From NCBI GenBank assembly GCA_020184695.1, contig JAANOX010000275.1:62001-126000 (forward strand): a DNA stretch of 64,000 bases, written 5' to 3'. Numbering within the stretch: the stretch's first letter is position 1; every line of letters starts with the position of its first letter. This DNA is from Histomonas meleagridis 2922-C6/04-290x (taxonomy: Eukaryota > Protista > Parabasalia). The notes beneath the pieces are model-generated. The model was given only the letters and a program-made list of their open reading frames with translations. It searched no databases and had not been told where the DNA came from. Positions 32,801-40,611 of the stretch are shown in pieces. Position numbers and translations under genes: made by a program.

Positions 32801-33045
32801 AGACTGACAATTGATTCAGGAGTGAGACCTATTATATCAAGCTTGTCTTCAAGGATAGAAGCGTCGACGATAACAGAACTAATATTGCCATTAACATAGA
32901 GTTTGGTATATCCTGTGAGAGAACTTTGAGAAAATTGAGTTATTGGAACATAATCTGCGGTCACGCTACTGCACAGGTCTGCACTGTTCGCCACACAAAT
33001 GCCTTTGCATGAACAAAATTGAACTAACAAATAGCACAAGATCAT
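29830..33045 (-). CDS. Type I membrane surface protein (1071 aa)
   Basis: Signal peptide, two Cys-capped modules (ICVANSADLC, YCVGGKCD), acidic inserts, TM IIVGCVIVAVVVVAIIVGVIVY, KKKK stop-transfer, short Tyr-containing tail. Confidence 0.85.
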   Translation of the reverse strand: MILCYLLVQFCSCKGICVANSADLCSSVTADYVPITQFSQSSLTGYTKLYVNGNISSVIVDASILEDKLDIIGLTPESIVSLKFSNSSLKDKKLEIINITVEVHSAEIYKSELILENVVLKPINGALKIFSDELVSDTNSIIGVSHIEVCKFELTNIDANLSTDLTINFRFSLSKSNSIKIAKEITADLNLLISRLRLDVTPVGCEHKIIFNSTFVRPKVKFSGIKNHVTVSHEGWFTYLEMWEYEFKLSGGTLSFPTDTWPLTLTNLGDDDDDDDELFFEIKQSHKSTIEIGAQNIPAYIINDCKEPLDIVVTSPNAGITGRIEVATANDMIRSTLQEPITFTTSSIHGESNAKINANTNSTLTLHLRFESSSKHIANNINTIYDYIEIEDEVKYLKNFNLASNGHLQVEVSIEDDGEFQYGRLTTDSAIIPESGTKYNMDLKFDIEVSTSDFEMIKSKLDIPMNVVCSKQSIERDSWVLNYVTEEEEENDDDYYEYEEYEDEEDKFARMFSEVTELRYGTDKNQSCVQLVFISLPPSIAEKYCVGGKCDQGYVTIDMQTMSAIQNKVHKGTKKIDLQINENMTQQYSIQLPNLLNKEAAVTISSKTKSQVNVDMDLTIKDHCSSLSVTNSILNFNIKNSPVDNYTEVNVPTLSIYQSTIIGQLKDQISFTGKKVYLDLQTYQELHNSKYGNLTVEFDQTVSDITITSTGINANGVLISKDKVAGTLGTKFTSMNPINLILNSTTTIPGFKVDVSPIGNNSVINFVGNWESLQNVNDSVIVIKHAGNVTINNITSNLNISLEGTGNVIINLKDGQKKLVVENPMKVSGNVTFDINGEVEFNEIQFSSRAQFKLNSASTTTTIESNEVKAKDVVVRTTASVGGSINSNDVVMKSGTSLVVDTININGNKIIFNYHIGTIPRIETKALISKPKQIIMNYETKDGNIDLNNYIGTTNEIYCTDNTTFTLETCESYLGLITFQATEKDLNGENSVLKAYCSNNADTLNTKVMTCINVNLTAAPEISGGGSSGSKTAIIVGCVIVAVVVVAIIVGVIVYKKKKGTGDYKSYNTIG

Positions 33046-33617
33046 TACACCAAAATGAATTTAAGCCCACTCAAAATTGTATCATTTACGAAAAGCCCAT
33101 TCAAATAACACAATTTTCAATTATTGTTTTTTTGGAATTGAATTAAAATTATATCAAAAAGTTTCCAATATTTTCGGTTAATGTTCAAAATTTCAACTTC
33201 GATCAGGTCCAAAATTGACAAAAGCACTCAAATTCCGGTGTTCTCCAAAAACACTGCAAAGACAACAATGGAATACAAATATCAGTAAAAAATTATCACA
33301 TTGAGTGACAATTCCACTGTTTTGTGTTTGTATCATAATGTATTTCTGAAGACGATCAGATTTCCGTATAAATTTCATCATCTTTCAAAAAATATTTTAT
33401 AAACTTTCAAATACTTTATTAATGCACTCATTGTTGTAAAAATTTTCATCTTTCAATATTGTAATTTTAATACATTAATATTTTCTATTTTTGGATTTTT
33501 CATAAATTATTTTAATGAAGTCTCTGTTGTATATTGATTGATTTAATTTTAATGATTTTTTCCCCTGTAGGTTGGTTTTCCTGCGCAACTAAATCAGGGG
33601 AAGTCATTTGTTGAATT

Positions 33618-33625
33618 AACGGTTT
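33618..33625 (+). promoter_or_regulatory. M3-like element (AACGGTTT)
   Basis: Consensus match 14 bp upstream of ATG 33640. Confidence 0.4.
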
Positions 33626-33639
33626 CCGAAGAGAAGCTC

Positions 33640-36600
33640 ATGGATTCACCAATTTATATTGAGGATGTGTTTTCAGTAGCTTCTTTCAAGGATTCACTGG
33701 CTCAAACAGGGCTCGTATTTACAGATGATCAAATTATTTCTTTAATTAATGAAAAAACAATAACAATATTTTCGAATTCGAATTTTTTTCTTGTAAATTT
33801 GGAAAATCCTGAAACGTCCACACTTTTAGATGTAGGCGATACTACAAATGTAGACATTTCACCATCATTAAATACGATGGTTCAATTTCAGTTTGGAAAA
33901 ATACACTTTATGAATTATCAAACGCAAACCATATTTCTTTCATACAAGCTTGATGGCGATTTTTTTATCTCATTTTTAAAATGGGTTCTTAATGATACTG
34001 TAATTTTGATTCGGAATGATGGTTTTATTTTTCATATTGAAATAGACACTTATAAACAAACAAGTTCTTCATCTGATGTTTATCATATTCCCAAGATAGT
34101 TGAATTTGACATCATTTCAAATTGCATTGAATCAATTGACAAGAATTATTTTTGTGTTACTTGTCTTAAATCTGATAAATCGCTTGGCCGAGTTCTTCTT
34201 TTTACTAAAGGCCGAGATATTCCACGAATATATGAAGGTACAGCCTCAACATTTACTGATGATTATTCATATCTTATAATCTGTCACAAAATCCATAATA
34301 TGATAAAAGTATTTATAATTAAAGTTGATGATCAAACAGATGTTGATGATTCATTTAATAATCGAATCATTAATATTCATTTAGAAGAAACATTAATTGA
34401 AGATTATCCGACATATGTAATCTATAATCCGCGATATTCCAGTGCATTTGTATTTACTAATAAAGGCTTTTTATATATAATAAATATACAAACTGCAGAA
34501 GTAATATATTCCATGATAATTAGTCAGGAACTTAATATTCAACAATTTTATTTTTCGCAACAAATGAATGAAATATATATACTATTGCAAGATGAAAGTA
34601 TCAACAAAATTAAATTTAATGATCAAATATTTATTGATTATATTATAATTGAAAAAGAAATTCCAAGTTCATTATTTACAATGAATGATTATATTTCAAT
34701 ATGTTCAAACAAAGAATTTAATAACGTTCAATTAGAGCAATTAATTTCATCAAATAATTATACAGCAATTTCATTAATGGCATCGACTAATCCGAATTAT
34801 AAAGATATTTGTTTAATACGATTATTAAAAGAGAACAACAAAAAATTTACGTATTTATTCTTAAATCAAATGATCTCTATGAAAAATATCAAATTTAATG
34901 AAATCGAAACAATTATATTTTGTAAGTTATTAATCGAAAATAATCAACAAATGCAAATAGTCCAAATATTTATTGATAATTTAACTATAACTAAAAATGT
35001 TGCAGATAGATGTCGGAAAGATATTCGAATTGCTATGAAGTTTTATGATCATTTAAAGATGTATGATAATATTTTAGAGTTATGTATCGAAAACGAAATG
35101 TATAATAAAGTCCAAGAAATATTTCAAATGAAATCTGATTATTCACCAAATTGGATAAATATTATTCAAGTTATCATTGAAAAAAATCCCGACAAAATCG
35201 AAAACTTCATAAATTTCTTAAGAGTTCAAGACATTTTTAATGAAAACCTTAAAATTATCATCAAAATATTATGCGAAAATCAAATGTATTACATTGCAAT
35301 TAATTTTATATTATCATTAATTAAAAGAGGCCGACAAATTGATTCCGAAACACAAACGAAATTAATAAAATTATGTTTATTATATAAACCTAAATATGGA
35401 TTATCATTAATATCTAATAATATATGTAAAGATTATGATAAAGAAAAAATCGAACAAATTAAAAATTATATTATATCTAAGAATTATATATATACATTTT
35501 TAGATAATTTGGTTAATGTTAATTCGCCAATCATTAATACAATTCAATACTATATGTTTAAGAATTATTTCGAGAAACAAAACTATGAAAGTGCATCTAA
35601 ATTTTTATTATATAATTCTAAACTTTGTATATTTTTATCATCGTCACAATATTTCATGAATTATTTAATAACAAATTCGTTGACAGATATAATTCATACG
35701 ATATATTTCGTATATAAAAAATATAATTTAAACATTCAAACGATTACTAATCCAAATGATTTTATCTTAGCTTGTAAATATTGTACTTATCCAATTATAG
35801 CTATTCATGGACATAATGAAAGTTCTCCTTATTATCCTATAAATTTTGATTCCGAACAATATGAATCAGCTTTAAAGGTTTTGTTGGATAGAGATGATCC
35901 AGAGTTATTAATTAATTGTTTAAATGATTTGAATAAATTAATTGCAATAGAAGCTAATCCTATAACACCTTTATATTATGTTATAAAAGAAAAAAAAGTG
36001 TCGCTTTTAAAGCAAATGTGGATAATAATTAAACCGTTTGATTTAAATGATCATGATTTATTACTTGCTTATTCTTATTGGAAACATTTATATCCAAATG
36101 AAAAACCACCGTTTTATCTGGAGAGAACGTTAAAGAAACATATTTTGAACGTTAACTTCAAAATTGTGAGTATGAAAGCAAACGATAAAATTCCATTGAA
36201 TAATTCAATAAGTGTAACTGATTATCATTGTTTAAATGTTTCTTCAATTTTTTTGGATGCAAATAAACTTTTTAGTTATCTCTTAAATAGAATTAATCGT
36301 TATAATCTGGAATTTAATATTTCGCCTGTGATAATGATTAATAATCGATATCTAATTATGCAATTGCCTTGTTTGTTTTTGGCCGATTCAAATGCCCTGA
36401 TACATCCAAAACTTTATACAGAAGTGACACCTATCGGCGAGGAAGCAACTGGAACTGGACCCGTTCAAGATTTGTTTAATTCTTATTTTAAAGAATTATC
36501 AAAATTAGATATATTCGATGTGGATGAAAATACTACAATGATATTGCCGACTGCTGCTGCTAGTGCTTCCAAAGAAAGAATCGATGAAATTGAAAGAATA

Positions 36601-37524
36601 TTTTACGGACTTGGTGTTGTATTCTTAAAAACGTTAATAGACATGAGACAAATGGGAGGCGTCAATGATGTTAATAACAAGAAAATGCCAACAGAACTCA
36701 TTTTCCATCCTTGGATATTTCAAGCCTTAAGTTGGAAGTTTAGTTCCAATACAAAACATTTACTTAATGAAAGTCTTTTATACGATTACAAATTTGCCGA
36801 ATTTTTAAGTTCTGCTAAAGAATCAAATAATATTGAATTCATTAAGTATGAAGTAACCACAAACAAGTTATTCTTATTTAATCGAAAGCTCTTCTTTAGG
36901 GCCATATACGATGGCTTTAATTTAAATTATCGAAGAGGCTTTTTACCCAAGTCATTTAAAACCGAAATGGAAAAATCCAAGAAAGAGCTCACTGAATTTT
37001 ACAAGATCATCAACAGTATATCACCAGAGTCAGTGCAGCTATTAATAGTTGGCTCACCACGGATTCATGCGCATGTTCTCTTGGACAAATTCATCTTCCA
37101 AGCGTATGAAGGCGTTGACCTATCAGGCGAAGGCTCTGATAAGTTAATGGACTTATCAAAGAGTCCGCAAAACGCGAAACTCTTCGAGAAGGTAAAGAAC
37201 ATATTCCGTAATTACATCAAAAAACTTTGCGACAAGCCGCAGCAAACAAAGATAAAGCGATTCCTGAGTTACCTGTTCGGCGTTCCAAGTTTCTCGCCGC
37301 TCATGCACGAGAAATGGCTCTTTGCAGTTTCGTTCTATTCGAGGGCAAAGTTTTTGGACGCGTTCGCATGCGACAGGTTTGTTATTGTGCCGATGTTCGA
37401 CTCCGAAAAGGAATTGGACGAAATCGTAAATAACACGTTGATAAACCACGAAAAAGACGCAGTAAGCAGAGACGTAATATACGCCAGACAAGTCCACGAT
37501 ACGTTTGACCCAAAGAACGAATGA
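33640..37524 (+). CDS. Clathrin heavy chain N-terminal-like region fused to a HECT-like E3 ligase domain
   Basis: aa 1-600 align by eye to the clathrin propeller, linker and first repeats; aa ~925-1280 show HECT motifs with a candidate catalytic Cys1244 in DAFACDRFVIVPMF. Confidence 0.7.
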   Translation: MDSPIYIEDVFSVASFKDSLAQTGLVFTDDQIISLINEKTITIFSNSNFFLVNLENPETSTLLDVGDTTNVDISPSLNTMVQFQFGKIHFMNYQTQTIFLSYKLDGDFFISFLKWVLNDTVILIRNDGFIFHIEIDTYKQTSSSSDVYHIPKIVEFDIISNCIESIDKNYFCVTCLKSDKSLGRVLLFTKGRDIPRIYEGTASTFTDDYSYLIICHKIHNMIKVFIIKVDDQTDVDDSFNNRIINIHLEETLIEDYPTYVIYNPRYSSAFVFTNKGFLYIINIQTAEVIYSMIISQELNIQQFYFSQQMNEIYILLQDESINKIKFNDQIFIDYIIIEKEIPSSLFTMNDYISICSNKEFNNVQLEQLISSNNYTAISLMASTNPNYKDICLIRLLKENNKKFTYLFLNQMISMKNIKFNEIETIIFCKLLIENNQQMQIVQIFIDNLTITKNVADRCRKDIRIAMKFYDHLKMYDNILELCIENEMYNKVQEIFQMKSDYSPNWINIIQVIIEKNPDKIENFINFLRVQDIFNENLKIIIKILCENQMYYIAINFILSLIKRGRQIDSETQTKLIKLCLLYKPKYGLSLISNNICKDYDKEKIEQIKNYIISKNYIYTFLDNLVNVNSPIINTIQYYMFKNYFEKQNYESASKFLLYNSKLCIFLSSSQYFMNYLITNSLTDIIHTIYFVYKKYNLNIQTITNPNDFILACKYCTYPIIAIHGHNESSPYYPINFDSEQYESALKVLLDRDDPELLINCLNDLNKLIAIEANPITPLYYVIKEKKVSLLKQMWIIIKPFDLNDHDLLLAYSYWKHLYPNEKPPFYLERTLKKHILNVNFKIVSMKANDKIPLNNSISVTDYHCLNVSSIFLDANKLFSYLLNRINRYNLEFNISPVIMINNRYLIMQLPCLFLADSNALIHPKLYTEVTPIGEEATGTGPVQDLFNSYFKELSKLDIFDVDENTTMILPTAAASASKERIDEIERIFYGLGVVFLKTLIDMRQMGGVNDVNNKKMPTELIFHPWIFQALSWKFSSNTKHLLNESLLYDYKFAEFLSSAKESNNIEFIKYEVTTNKLFLFNRKLFFRAIYDGFNLNYRRGFLPKSFKTEMEKSKKELTEFYKIINSISPESVQLLIVGSPRIHAHVLLDKFIFQAYEGVDLSGEGSDKLMDLSKSPQNAKLFEKVKNIFRNYIKKLCDKPQQTKIKRFLSYLFGVPSFSPLMHEKWLFAVSFYSRAKFLDAFACDRFVIVPMFDSEKELDEIVNNTLINHEKDAVSRDVIYARQVHDTFDPKNE

Positions 37525-37877
37525 AATATAAAGATAAATTATTAATAAAATATAAATTAATTGTCGATATGGTAAATGTTTAAAAGTGAAACTTCTGCTA
37601 AAGCAATTAATGTAATTATTATTGTTTCATGTAGTTGGTCACTTAATTTATGCAATTTTTTATTATTGTTCGCATATGAAAACTCATTTTCAAACATTTT
37701 TACACCTACTTCTATACAGACATAGATTCACCCAAATTAAAATTTGGCAACGAATCTTCGTGGTCGGAATTAGGAAAAACGCGATAGACAACACTTAATT
37801 AACATTAATTCATTTTTGTTCAATGTGTAATTTATCTATTTAGAAGAAAAAGTTTTCTAAATGACACAAACTTGATG

Positions 37878-38300
37878 CTAAAGTGCTGTTTGGAATAATT
37901 TAAATAATTTCCAATTATTATTGAAATAAAGAATTATTAAATTTAATTTTAAATAAAACAAATAAATATCTTTAGCATTAAAATCAATTCCTTCTTGAAC
38001 AAGATGTAATTTAACTATTTCTATATAAAATAGTTTTAGAAATTTTAAGGAAAATTCAACTACTGCTTCATATGCATCTTTAAATGTTGAATGATTTTGT
38101 TCACATAAGTGAATGATTTCATCATTTCCACATCCAGCTGCATATCTACAAGTAATAATTGCATTCATAAGTAAATGGAAACTGAATCAAAAAAAGCTCC
38201 ATAATCAATTAATATAACATTTGGTTTGCTAACAAAAAATATTTTTCATCATATGCTAAAATGTTGATATATTGAAGTCTTTCTATTTAGGATTATAATC
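37878..38300 (-). pseudogene. Truncated DUF3447/ankyrin gene relic with one spacer-type insert
   Basis: IDYGAFF, GCGNDEIIHLCEQNH, EGIDFNAKD then an 81-nt AT-rich spacer, TAL, stop; paralogous to 49459-52358. Confidence 0.75.
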
Positions 38301-38841
38301 ATTAATGAATCTGATTCCCATTGAATTTCTCCCTCTAATTGTTTTTTAGTAAAATTTATTCTTTTCACGACTTGAGGAGGTGTGAGTTTTTGGATTGCTC
38401 TAAGTTAGAGAACTTCAATTTTATGAGCTTTATTTTTAAAAGCCTCTCTATAATGCTGCATAAAAATAGGTGGGATATACACTATATTTTTTATTAGATT
38501 TTTACTATAAGTTTAAAATTATTTTATCTAATCAAAAATAAAATTTCAATCACAACAAATAAAACTTCACCTAATGGTGTTACACATTTTAATGGAATAT
38601 TTCAAGATGTTTCTGATTATAAAGTCAATTGATTTAATAGAATGTTGAGATATCTTAAAAACTAATAAACAAAAATGACAGAATTTATCTTCTCCTTATT
38701 TTTTGGAGTTTTTTCCTAAGAATGTGACAAATTAGAAGAAACCGTCAAAGAGATTTTTTTCGCGTAAATAATTGAAAACAAATTTCTGATAAACGATAAC
38801 ATTTACATAAAAAGTGGATTCAATACATTGAAACATATCAC

Positions 38842-40611
38842 ATGACCGTTGAAACAGATGAGCTCGAAATCAAGAAACTTTTGGGGAAAAGAATCCGTGT
38901 AGATAACTTGGATGTGGTCATTGAGAATCAAATTTCCAAAAAGAAGAACACAATTGTTTATCTTGCTTCTGATATCCGTGGCAAAAGTTATGCTTTAAAA
39001 GCAATACAATCACCAAATGATAGTGAATTCAGGAATTCTATTCAGGAGTGCAAAATTTATCAGGAAGTTTCGTTAGAAACTAATATTATTTCTATTTTTG
39101 GAATAGAATTTTTTTCAAAAGCAAGAGTTGCCATAATTTTAATGGAACTTGCACAGTATTCATTAAAGGAGTATATGAAAAACAAAGCAAAAGAAATGAC
39201 AGAAAAAAAAATTATTGAAATTTTTCAATCAATTTGTACTGGAGTTCATTCACTCCATATACAAGATAACCCAATTGCGCACATGTGCCTCACTGCAAGT
39301 AATATTCTTTATAGCCATGGCGTTTGGAAGATAACAGATTTTGGAAGCTCAACATCCATTGATTCGGATTCAATCAACTACGATTCCATTAGCAAGAAGC
39401 TTTGTCCTCCAGAAATACTTCTTGGAAACGAAGTTGATAGCCTTAAAGTTGATATCTGGCAACTCGGATGTCTTCTTTATAAAATGTGTACGCAAAAATC
39501 ACCATTTAAAGGTAAAACAGAGTCCGAAATAATTCATGCAGAATGCGCAATACCTGAAAATCTTAATAGTCAAATGACAGAATTAATTAAGTTTTGCTTA
39601 AACCCTGATCCACGTTGTCGCCCCACAATAATTGGTGTTCTTTCGAAAACTCATTTATTGTTTCCTGCTTATACTGATCCACGACATTGTCACCCACCAA
39701 AACCAAATTGTTCAACTGAAATCTTATCTCTCCCACACTCACCTCACCCACCACTTCCATCTTTTCCACCGCCAGGTTCTAAGGTCACATCTGCCTCTTT
39801 GAATCAAATCCCACGACTTCAAAGAAGGCAGCACGTATCGTACAACCGCATTAACCGCTTTAAACGGCTGAGTGAATCACAATTGAATGAAATCAACTCA
39901 CAAGTTAACCGCCTTAATAATCTTCTTCCTCCTGTTAATGTTGAAGAAATACTTGATCGAATAATGAACGACCGTGACAATTTGGTTAACGAACTCTTAA
40001 ATAGTACTCCAAATGATTTCAACAATACATTAAATCTTGAAATGCAATTCTCACCTGAAGAAACTCAAAGATTTCTCTTTTGTATTCTTCATTCCAGCAA
40101 AACAAAGATCTCTTTTGTGCTCTCCAATGCTCCAATTTTTCATGATGAATATGCACAAAATGCATGGGACTCACGAGTCGAAATTAACAGAGAGTTCCCA
40201 ATGTTCGAAGGCAATTTCTCATTGCATAAGTTCAAACGACATTGCGTCAAAAACAACATTGAGATGGTTGGATCTTCTCCAATCTGCCTTAAAGCTATCA
40301 ACAAGCTCCAAAACCATGTCGACTTCATCATCGAGATGCTGTCTCATGACACATGCGTTGATTTTGCGAACGAAGCACTTTTTAGTTATCAGATTATCTC
40401 TTACATCATTAGCAAACTCCTTTCAAAGAACATAGATAAGGAAACTTTGGAGGGTAGTGTAATAAAGAGGCTAGAAGGACAACACAGAAAGTTGCTTCCG
40501 TTCTTTGCTAAATTGGGAAATGGAGATTTCCCAATACATGCACATACATTCAAAACAAATAAAATTATACACGGACCAAAGCGATCGCAAAAGAAAAAAT
40601 CACGGAAATAA
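38842..40611 (+). CDS. NAK-family-like protein kinase, probable pseudokinase
   Basis: YALK, NPIAHMCLTASNIL (HRD and Lys lost), KITDFGSS, KVDIWQLGCLLYKMC; Pro-rich linker and helical C-terminus. Confidence 0.75.
   Translation: MTVETDELEIKKLLGKRIRVDNLDVVIENQISKKKNTIVYLASDIRGKSYALKAIQSPNDSEFRNSIQECKIYQEVSLETNIISIFGIEFFSKARVAIILMELAQYSLKEYMKNKAKEMTEKKIIEIFQSICTGVHSLHIQDNPIAHMCLTASNILYSHGVWKITDFGSSTSIDSDSINYDSISKKLCPPEILLGNEVDSLKVDIWQLGCLLYKMCTQKSPFKGKTESEIIHAECAIPENLNSQMTELIKFCLNPDPRCRPTIIGVLSKTHLLFPAYTDPRHCHPPKPNCSTEILSLPHSPHPPLPSFPPPGSKVTSASLNQIPRLQRRQHVSYNRINRFKRLSESQLNEINSQVNRLNNLLPPVNVEEILDRIMNDRDNLVNELLNSTPNDFNNTLNLEMQFSPEETQRFLFCILHSSKTKISFVLSNAPIFHDEYAQNAWDSRVEINREFPMFEGNFSLHKFKRHCVKNNIEMVGSSPICLKAINKLQNHVDFIIEMLSHDTCVDFANEALFSYQIISYIISKLLSKNIDKETLEGSVIKRLEGQHRKLLPFFAKLGNGDFPIHAHTFKTNKIIHGPKRSQKKKSRK

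What the first reader, a model, noticed from the sequence alone, without database searches (positions are those of the whole stretch)
33640..37524. Clathrin heavy chain terminal domain fused to a HECT ubiquitin ligase
The N-terminal ~600 aa track clathrin heavy chain in order. FLVNLENPE ~ VIIDMNDPS; ISFLKWVLNDTVILI ~ VTFWKWISLNTVALV; EQLISSNNYTAIS ~ NALFAQGNYSEAA; SDYSPNWINII ~ VGYTPDWIFLL; QTKLIKLCL...DYDKEKIEQI ~ QTRLLEMNL...HYDRAHIAQL. The leg and trimerisation domain are replaced by a HECT-like module (IGEEATGTGPVQDLF, FYGLGVVFLKTLID, IYDGF, VQLLIVG, RFLSYLFG, AFAC1244...VPMFDSEKEL). I know no described protein with this architecture. It could use the adaptor-binding propeller to ubiquitinate coat adaptors or cargo (inference).
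Basis: partly seen in the sequence, partly recalled or inferred. Interest (0 to 1): 0.82.

Follow-up and report, generated by a model that had tools for sequence, protein, structure and literature searches.

The report
Clathrin-head fused to cryptic HECT ligase
One intact, transcribed 1294-codon gene of a parabasalid parasite joins a diverged copy of the front third of clathrin heavy chain to an ankyrin-like plus HECT ubiquitin-ligase module that is a free-standing protein in every relative found, so the ligase has probably gained a coat-protein part as its targeting device.

Summary
ORF 33640-37524 (+) is 1294 codons. Residues 80-652 align colinearly with clathrin heavy chain (CHC) 79-663 (E 3.7e-18). 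Modelled with an alignment of 21 relatives (pLDDT 83), the C-terminal 669 residues are an ankyrin-like helical repeat (about 626-848) followed by a HECT fold (about 866-1275; VIA-align Z 22 to UBR5, 20.6 to E6AP; all 99 significant Foldseek PDB hits are HECT). Cys1244 is invariant in the 15-sequence alignment and aligns with the catalytic Cys of HERC5 and HERC6.

Pfam sees neither half. GenBank annotates only the last 388 residues.

- The ANK-like+HECT part is a complete member of a parabasalid family of standalone 650-726 aa proteins, including T. vaginalis TVAG_449750, "hypothetical".
- All 10 relatives' loci have a stop just upstream of the start and no CHC-like DNA, so the fusion looks specific to this lineage.
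- Only 2 of 8 experimentally defined adaptor-peptide-site residues of the clathrin terminal domain are kept, so binding of classical clathrin boxes is doubtful.

The junction is present in two DNA samples and three RNA data sets. A shorter internal isoform is not excluded. I rate it a new variant of a known kind (HECT E3 with an unprecedented N-terminal module). The function is inferred, and no ortholog with the fusion was found.

The parts
33640..37524 (+). Whole ORF, 1294 codons plus stop
   Evidence: identical in GenBank contig; RNA-library contigs cover 33610-37567
33604..33608 (+). TCATT, an initiator-like motif 32-36 nt upstream of the ATG; candidate transcription start (inference)
   Evidence: Sequence. 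RNA contigs of two runs begin at 33610 and 33631. That parabasalid promoters use a TCA(+1)YW initiator is my own knowledge.
33640..34617 (+). Residues 1-326: counterpart of the clathrin heavy chain terminal domain (beta-propeller by homology; fold not modelled here)
   Evidence: phmmer against PDB: query 79-297 on terminal-domain chains 78-301, E 2e-4; part of the full alignment with E 3.7e-18
34618..35595 (+). Residues 327-652: counterpart of the clathrin linker and first part of the leg (CHC about 330-663)
   Evidence: colinear alignment; chains of CHC 1-574 score E 5e-11
35515..36183 (+). Residues 626-848: ankyrin-like helical repeat domain, the N-terminal domain of the standalone family
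   Evidence: Standalone relatives begin to align here. Model residues 1-223 have pLDDT above 90. VIA-align Z 7-8.2 to many ankyrin-repeat domains. No Pfam Ank hit.
36235..37464 (+). Residues 866-1275: HECT domain (N-lobe about 866-1140, C-lobe about 1140-1275)
   Evidence: C-lobe alone Z 11.9 to the UBR5 C-lobe, rmsd 2.1
37369..37371 (+). Codon TGC for Cys1244, the predicted catalytic cysteine
   Evidence: invariant in the 15-sequence alignment; aligned to the catalytic Cys region of HERC6 and HERC5 C-lobes
36358..37524 (+). The only part annotated in GenBank (388 aa, from Met907): a truncated model
   Evidence: P0001 is 100% identical to residues 907-1294. Family conservation continues 280 residues upstream of it.

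Best explanation
This is one real gene for a chimeric HECT-type ubiquitin ligase.

Shown:
- A diverged paralog of the first ~650 residues of clathrin heavy chain (terminal domain, linker, start of the leg) runs without interruption into a complete member of a parabasalid family of ankyrin-like + HECT proteins.
- That family is free-standing (650-726 aa) everywhere else it was found.
- The fusion point lies at about residues 626-652, where the two homologies abut.
- The frame is maintained, the locus is transcribed from just upstream of the first ATG to just past the stop, and the family's Cys is invariant in the 15-sequence alignment.

Inferred:
- The HECT domain is catalytically active: E2 to Cys1244 thioester, then transfer to a substrate lysine.
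- The clathrin-like part lacks the leg repeats beyond about CHC 663, the light-chain site and the trimerisation domain. It therefore cannot build a lattice and serves as a targeting or substrate-recruiting module.
- That module brings the ligase to partners of clathrin-type propellers or legs at coated membranes, in the way the RCC1 propeller of HERC ligases or the ankyrin repeats of HACE1 recruit their partners.
- Because most classical peptide-site residues are changed, the ligands are probably not canonical clathrin boxes.

My confidence is about 0.85 for the architecture and single gene, and about 0.35 for the targeting mechanism.
For: - ORF and frame maintenance.
- CHC homology: E 3.7e-18, colinear 80-652 on 79-663. 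Language-model features of residues 1-640 point to propeller + solenoid coat proteins, including CHC, at 0.90-0.91.
- Family of standalone relatives: 23 hits, the full-length ones covering query 1-640; alignment.
- All 10 fetched loci have an in-frame stop 4-26 codons upstream of the start, and no CHC-like DNA by tblastn at E<=1.
- The window's protein sits inside a 100/100-supported clade with 8 standalone members.
- HECT fold: AF2 pLDDT 83.3, pTM 0.61; Foldseek PDB, 99 hits at E<=1e-3, the 50 listed all HECT; VIA-align Z 22.2, 20.6, 19.9, 18.2; both AFDB libraries give only HECT ligases.
- Cys.
- Transcription and junction: contigs of RNA libraries start at 33610/33631 and end at 37485-37567. 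Pieces 35338-35566, 35345-35548 and 35361-35607 cross the junction without a mismatch. The neighbouring stretch 38122-38900 is almost silent.
- The junction stretch is held at 1.00 in two DNA samples, and at 0.80-0.89 in three RNA runs of another study.
Against: - No ortholog with the fusion was found, so conservation of the joined state cannot be shown. The single genome may carry a young fusion of uncertain function.
- RNA word depth is about 2.5-3 times higher over the last 1.5-1.9 kb than over the 5' half. That fits 3' and GC bias, but also an internal promoter.
- The runs are only guessed to be RNA, and contigs cannot prove a single molecule.
- Neither half reaches any Pfam threshold.
- 6 of 8 defined peptide-site residues differ.
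- The Cys lies 50 residues from the C-terminus, not about 35 as I recall for classical HECTs, and the active-site loop reads AFACD rather than the usual AHTCFN (for this sequence; the classical values are my own knowledge).
Confidence: 0.6

Rival explanations
1. Two products from one ORF. The main product is the ordinary standalone-type ankyrin-like + HECT protein, made from an internal promoter and start (for example Met639, close to where the relatives begin). The clathrin-like part is translated only in a minor long isoform, or is a recently captured upstream gene with little function of its own.
For: All 14 full-length relatives are standalone and begin opposite residues ~600-640. Met639 lies there. 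RNA contig depth is about 13-22 over 35600-37500 against about 3-10 upstream. The GenBank annotators did not call the 5' part.
Against: - 640 upstream codons without a stop: P 2.5e-27.
- The upstream part keeps CHC homology at E 3.7e-18.
- RNA contigs begin right before the first ATG, and pieces cross the junction.
- The points where depth jumps differ between runs (35584, 35608, 35904, 35993). They follow the rise in GC from 0.21 to 0.29-0.44, as expected from coverage bias.
- The two high-depth contigs that start closest begin downstream of the Met639 codon (35554-35556).
Confidence: 0.2
2. The fusion is real, but the clathrin-like part does not recruit substrates. It could dock onto clathrin lattices through leg-leg contacts. 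It could act as a decoy that competes with clathrin for partners. Or it could be an autoinhibitory or oligomerisation module for the ligase.
For: The part retained extends into the leg (CHC 330-663), not only the propeller. Most classical peptide-site residues are changed. Many HECT ligases are regulated by intramolecular contacts with N-terminal domains, for example the autoinhibited Itch, WWP1 and Nedd4-2 structures among the hits.
Against: No direct evidence. The lattice contacts of the distal leg depend on trimeric geometry that this protein lacks (established knowledge of clathrin structure, not tested).
Confidence: 0.15
3. Assembly or sequencing artefact: two neighbouring genes merged by a lost stop codon or a chimeric join.
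For: The fusion is seen in one species only. The junction lies in the most AT-rich, low-complexity part of the ORF, where GC is 0.17-0.19 at all three codon positions of codons 601-700.
Against: The junction stretch 35250-35850 is complete in contigs of two DNA samples, and 80-89% complete in three RNA runs of a separate 2023 study. RNA contigs cross it with no mismatch, insertion or deletion. The two homologies abut or overlap (CHC to 652, family from about 626), leaving no room for a stop, an intergenic spacer and a start.
Confidence: 0.03

Closest known systems
Clathrin heavy chain (CHC17/CLTC and orthologs)
   Same: Residues 80-652 are homologous and colinear with CHC 79-663: terminal domain, linker, first leg segment.
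   Different: The leg beyond about CHC 663, the light-chain-binding region and the trimerisation domain are absent, so no triskelion is possible. About 20% identity. No Pfam clathrin model is matched. 6 of 8 defined peptide-site residues are changed.
HACE1 (ankyrin repeats + HECT)
   Same: The C-terminal 669 residues have the same order of parts: a helical ankyrin-like repeat domain, then HECT. HACE1 aligns over both in the fold searches, and HACE1 clusters rank 2-3 by language-model features.
   Different: No detectable sequence relationship. The ankyrin assignment rests on Z 7-8 only. HACE1 has no coat-protein domain.
HERC ligases (RCC1 beta-propeller + HECT; HERC1 binds clathrin heavy chain)
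   Same: A seven-bladed-propeller-type recruiting domain upstream of a C-terminal HECT. An RCC1+HECT cluster is the nearest atlas cluster to the whole protein, though at only 0.67. HERC6 and HERC5 C-lobes are the best profile hits. HERC1 is reported to bind clathrin heavy chain (PMC3673628).
   Different: The propeller here is of clathrin origin, not RCC1, and it is followed by a clathrin-type helical leg. This is an independent domain combination.
Parabasalid standalone ankyrin-like + HECT family (for example T. vaginalis TVAG_449750 / A2F4B9, 'hypothetical protein')
   Same: Residues 626-1294 are a full-length member: 20-37% identity over the whole length, with the same invariant Cys and motifs.
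   Different: All other members found are 650-726 aa, with a stop codon just upstream of their start. Only this one carries the 625-residue clathrin-like extension.

Membership tests
HECT E3 ubiquitin ligases | Bilobal HECT fold (large N-lobe, small C-lobe) at the C-terminus of the protein | tested here: met
   Model pLDDT 83. VIA-align Z 22.2 UBR5, 20.6 E6AP, 19.9 UBE3C, 18.2 Rsp5. The C-lobe alone gives Z 11.9 at rmsd 2.1. Foldseek hits in PDB and AFDB are all HECT.
HECT E3 ubiquitin ligases | Conserved catalytic cysteine in the C-lobe | tested here: met
   Cys1244 is invariant in the 15-sequence alignment. It aligns to the catalytic-Cys position of the HERC6 and HERC5 C-lobes. It lies 50 residues from the C-terminus, further than I recall for classical HECTs.
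HECT E3 ubiquitin ligases | Match to the Pfam HECT model PF00632 | tested here: not met
   No Pfam hit even at E<=10 for this protein, nor for 10 relatives at E<=1. The family profile against PDB reaches only E 0.008. It is a HECT by fold and motif order, and a sequence outlier.
HECT E3 ubiquitin ligases | E2-dependent ubiquitin thioester formation and transfer | not testable with these tools
   Needs a biochemical assay.
Clathrin heavy chain | N-terminal terminal domain and linker homologous to CHC 1-~500 | tested here: met
   phmmer E 3.7e-18 for full CHC, 5e-11 for CHC 1-574, 2e-4 for terminal-domain chains, all colinear. The fold was not modelled.
Clathrin heavy chain | Full leg of CHCR repeats, light-chain-binding region and C-terminal trimerisation domain | tested here: not met
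   CHC homology stops at CHC 663. The remaining 640 residues are ankyrin-like + HECT. It is therefore not a clathrin heavy chain, only a derivative of its N-terminal third.
Clathrin heavy chain | Residues of the adaptor-peptide sites: site 1 T87 Q89 K96 K98; site 2 Q152 I154; site 3 R188 Q192 (PMC7041688) | tested here: not met
   Counterparts read from the alignment and checked: gap, H89, Q96, I98; D157, I159; R192, R196. That is 2 of 8 identical. The alignment is at about 20% identity, so single positions are uncertain.
HACE1-like (ANK + HECT) | Ankyrin repeats N-terminal to HECT | tested here: inconclusive
   Residues 626-835 match some 30 ankyrin-repeat structures at Z 6.6-8.2. That is below the tool's caution level for helical repeats. 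No Pfam Ank hit.

The most novel reading that the evidence does not exclude
A coat-mimic ligase: the clathrin-derived propeller and leg still recognise linear motifs or surfaces of adaptor or coat proteins. The protein would then ubiquitinate adaptors, cargo or clathrin partners directly at budding sites. That would be the first case of a protocoatomer module reused as the substrate receptor of an E3, and a natural tool for finding the parasite's clathrin-interaction network.
Probability: 0.3. Interest if true: 0.75.

Novelty: new variant of a known kind. Interest (0 to 1): 0.55.

Why it matters
HECT ligases gain their specificity from whatever is fused upstream of the catalytic domain. A clathrin-heavy-chain head and neck in that position has not been described, as far as I could find.

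If the joined protein is made and active, it links coat recognition and ubiquitination in one polypeptide. That would give a simple handle (pull-downs with residues 1-650, C1244A trapping) on membrane-traffic regulation in a poorly studied poultry parasite.

The work also shows three smaller things:
- A parabasalid family annotated as 'hypothetical' (for example TVAG_449750) is a cryptic HECT ligase family.
- Domain databases miss both halves of this protein.
- The public gene model covers only 30% of the gene.

The limits are that it is a single-species fusion with no conserved ortholog found, and that its function is inferred.

Tried and rejected
- Pfam on the whole protein and on each half: nothing, even at E<=10.
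- phmmer of the C-terminal half against PDB: nothing.
- Single-sequence AlphaFold of the C-terminal half: useless, pLDDT 35. It succeeded only with the alignment of relatives.
- All three word-indexed homolog searches failed: whole protein, family profile, and residues 60-660. Only the GenBank fragment of the same gene was returned. So I have no parabasalid CHC for comparison, and no search of adequate sensitivity for relatives of the N-terminal half.
- The back-translated pattern scan of metagenome contigs found no relative.
- I looked for CHC-like DNA upstream of the relatives' genes: none in 10 loci. For the P0003/P0025 contigs no DNA could be fetched. Two unexplained upstream genes of 262 and 318 aa there remain unchecked.
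- I considered that the family's first helices are clathrin-derived, because of a faint Clathrin_H_link hit in P0002 (E 0.12). I rejected this: the structure search gives ankyrin-like repeats, and the family profile finds no clathrin in PDB.
- I considered conserved linkage with a protein kinase gene, since kinases neighbour the gene in the window, L002 and L008/L009. I rejected this: the kinases are only 24-27% identical, no closer than unrelated kinases.
- Rfam found nothing in 33000-39000.
- Earlier notes of this scan hold nothing on clathrin or this gene.
Full report
**What is there.** The window is AT-rich, intron-poor eukaryotic DNA. Its neighbours include a BspA-type LRR protein, a TRAPP subunit, an adaptin-like protein and a protein kinase. 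The stretch is identical to GenBank contig WSYJ01000177.1 of assembly GCA_020186115.1. From memory that assembly is Histomonas meleagridis, and a genome paper for that species is in the library (PMC8529796), but no tool confirmed the name.

At this composition a stop is expected about every 11 codons. The first 640 codons have none, while the other five frames of the same DNA have 42-85 (P 2.5e-27). The frame is therefore maintained by selection over the part that GenBank leaves unannotated.

**N-terminal half.**
- phmmer against all PDB sequences returns clathrin heavy chain (CHC) alone above noise: E 3.7e-18 for full-length CHC, with residues 80-652 aligned in order to CHC 79-663.
- CHC 1-574 scores 5e-11, and terminal-domain crystals score 2e-4.
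- Language-model features of residues 1-640 point to propeller-plus-solenoid coat proteins: IFT140, IFT122, WDR19 and CHC, all at 0.89-0.91.
- No Pfam clathrin model is reached, and identity is only about 20%.
- This is therefore an old, diverged paralog of the head, linker and first leg segment, not a recent copy of the housekeeping gene.

**C-terminal half.** It has no Pfam or PDB sequence hit on its own.

An exhaustive HMMER scan of 1.84 billion representatives found 23 relatives. The full-length ones are 650-726 aa and cover query residues 1-640 end to end. They come from metagenome and SRA assemblies. One cluster holds T. vaginalis TVAG_449750 (A2F4B9), 651 aa, 'hypothetical protein'.

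Their alignment shows blocks that follow the order of HECT motifs, and seven invariant residues, among them Cys1244. A profile of the family finds HECT C-lobes as its best PDB hits (HERC6 E 0.008, HERC5 0.017, E6AP 0.6). The invariant Cys sits on the catalytic-Cys position.

AlphaFold2 with the 21-sequence alignment gave a confident model: pLDDT 83.3, pTM 0.61. The single-sequence run had given 35.
- Foldseek against PDB gives 99 hits at E<=1e-3; the 50 listed are all HECT domains.
- Both AlphaFold DB libraries give only HECT ligases.
- The Foldseek-independent VIA-align search gives Z 22.2 (UBR5), 20.6 (E6AP-UbcH7 structure), 19.9 (UBE3C) and 18.2 (Rsp5). The C-lobe alone matches the UBR5 C-lobe at Z 11.9, rmsd 2.1 Å.
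- HECT maps to model residues about 241-650, that is protein residues 866-1275.

Model residues 1-223 (protein 626-848, pLDDT above 90) match some thirty ankyrin-repeat domains at Z 6.6-8.2. That is suggestive but below the tool's caution level for helical repeats, and there is no Pfam Ank hit. The C-terminal 669 residues thus resemble HACE1 in layout (ankyrin-like repeats + HECT). HACE1 clusters are also among the nearest by language-model features.

**The fusion.** The standalone relatives start to align at about residue 600-640 of this protein. CHC homology runs to residue 652. The two homologies abut, with no room for a stop, a spacer and a start.

In all ten relatives' loci that could be fetched, the gene has an in-frame stop 4-26 codons upstream of its ATG. 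tblastn with residues 1-640 finds nothing there at E<=1. In one locus the upstream neighbour, 24 bp away, is a kinase.

In a maximum-likelihood tree the window's protein lies inside a 100/100-supported clade with eight standalone members. The T. vaginalis member is in the sister clade (midpoint root). The simplest history is that a standalone ankyrin-like + HECT gene acquired a clathrin-derived 5' part in this lineage. No second species with the fusion was found. However, the searches available for the N-terminal half were weak.

**Is the joined form real and expressed?**
- The junction stretch 35250-35850 is complete in contigs of two DNA samples, and 80-89% complete in three runs of a separate 2023 study that are probably RNA.
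- Laid on 33000-38900, contigs of those runs cover the ORF from 33610/33631 to 37485-37567. That is from just before the ATG, and just after a TCATT initiator-like motif at 33604-33608.
- There are no mismatches, indels or joints inside the ORF.
- Pieces 35338-35566, 35345-35548 and 35361-35607 cross the junction.
- The downstream spacer 38122-38900 is nearly silent, which argues that this is RNA rather than contaminating DNA.

Word depth is 2.5-3 times higher over the last 1.5-1.9 kb. The position of the jump differs between runs (35584, 35608, 35904, 35993) and follows the rise in GC from 0.21 to 0.29-0.44. I attribute it to coverage bias, but an additional internal promoter giving a standalone-type product is not excluded. 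I give that rival 0.2. Contigs cannot prove a single molecule.

**Mechanism.**
Shown: the architecture, the invariant Cys, and the absence of every clathrin part needed for triskelion formation.

Inferred: the HECT domain takes ubiquitin from an E2 onto Cys1244 and passes it on. The clathrin-derived part acts as the targeting or substrate-recruiting module.

It is weakened by the state of the eight residues whose mutation defines three peptide sites of the terminal domain (T87, Q89, K96, K98; Q152, I154; R188, Q192; PMC7041688). Only I154 and R188 are kept. The others are a gap, H, Q, I, D and R. At 20% identity single columns are uncertain, but the classical site 1 is very unlikely to be intact.

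Alternatives are docking to clathrin legs, decoy action, or regulation of the ligase.

**Comparison and novelty.** By fold, position and Cys it is a HECT ligase, though a sequence outlier that Pfam misses. It is not a clathrin heavy chain, only a derivative of its first third.

The closest known layouts are HACE1 for the C-terminal module, and the HERC ligases for the general idea of a propeller upstream of HECT. HERC1 even binds clathrin heavy chain (PMC3673628).

No paper in the searched library describes a clathrin-derived domain in a HECT protein. The nearest atlas clusters to the whole protein score only 0.67. I class it as a new variant of a known kind.

The GenBank model (388 aa from Met907) is clearly too short. 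Family conservation continues 280 residues upstream of it, and CHC homology a further 625.

**Verdict.** This is a genuine and undescribed domain combination, but known from one genome only and without functional evidence. Interest 0.55.

Noticed in passing
window 37728-38121; ORF 37878-38168 (-): RNA-library word depth reaches 50,000-255,000 here, against about 5-20 on the neighbouring gene, with many short 'joints' and variant inserts. The stretch holds a 96-aa ORF on the minus strand with an ankyrin-like motif (…EGIDFNAKD…), and Rfam finds nothing. Most likely 45-50-nt pieces of many abundant ankyrin-repeat transcripts cross-map onto a degenerate ankyrin fragment. It is not a highly expressed local gene.
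   Followed up: partly
window 36940-37524 (codons 1101-1294 of the ORF): Third-position GC jumps to 0.50-0.60 in the last ~200 codons, against 0.14-0.23 in the first 1000. GC is 0.44 at 37000-37499. A 113-aa antisense ORF (37156-37497) lies there. The cause is unknown; gene conversion, a different local mutation bias or an overlapping feature are possible.
   Followed up: no
window 38842-40611 (+): A protein kinase ORF of 589 aa (Pkinase E 2e-36) lies 1.3 kb downstream. GenBank annotates only 442 aa of it. With the 388-aa model for the 1294-aa ORF, this suggests that this annotation systematically truncates 5' ends. The kinase is not orthologous to the kinases next to the relatives' genes.
   Followed up: partly
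window 33197-33456: A separate short transcribed piece (contigs 33249-33456 and 33263-33456, depth 13-42) sits in the spacer between the divergent 1071-aa surface-protein ORF and this gene. Its nature is unknown.
   Followed up: no
P0031 = T. vaginalis TVAG_449750 / A2F4B9; relatives P0002-P0018: A whole family of 650-726 aa parabasalid and metagenomic proteins, annotated as hypothetical and without any Pfam hit, is by this analysis an ankyrin-like + HECT ligase family with an invariant Cys.
   Followed up: partly
contigs of P0003/P0025 (ENA ERZ17292901, ERZ17292903; no DNA served): Two same-strand genes of 262 and 318 aa lie upstream of this close relative, with a 567-nt gap before it. They could not be read, so whether they are clathrin-like is unknown.
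   Followed up: no
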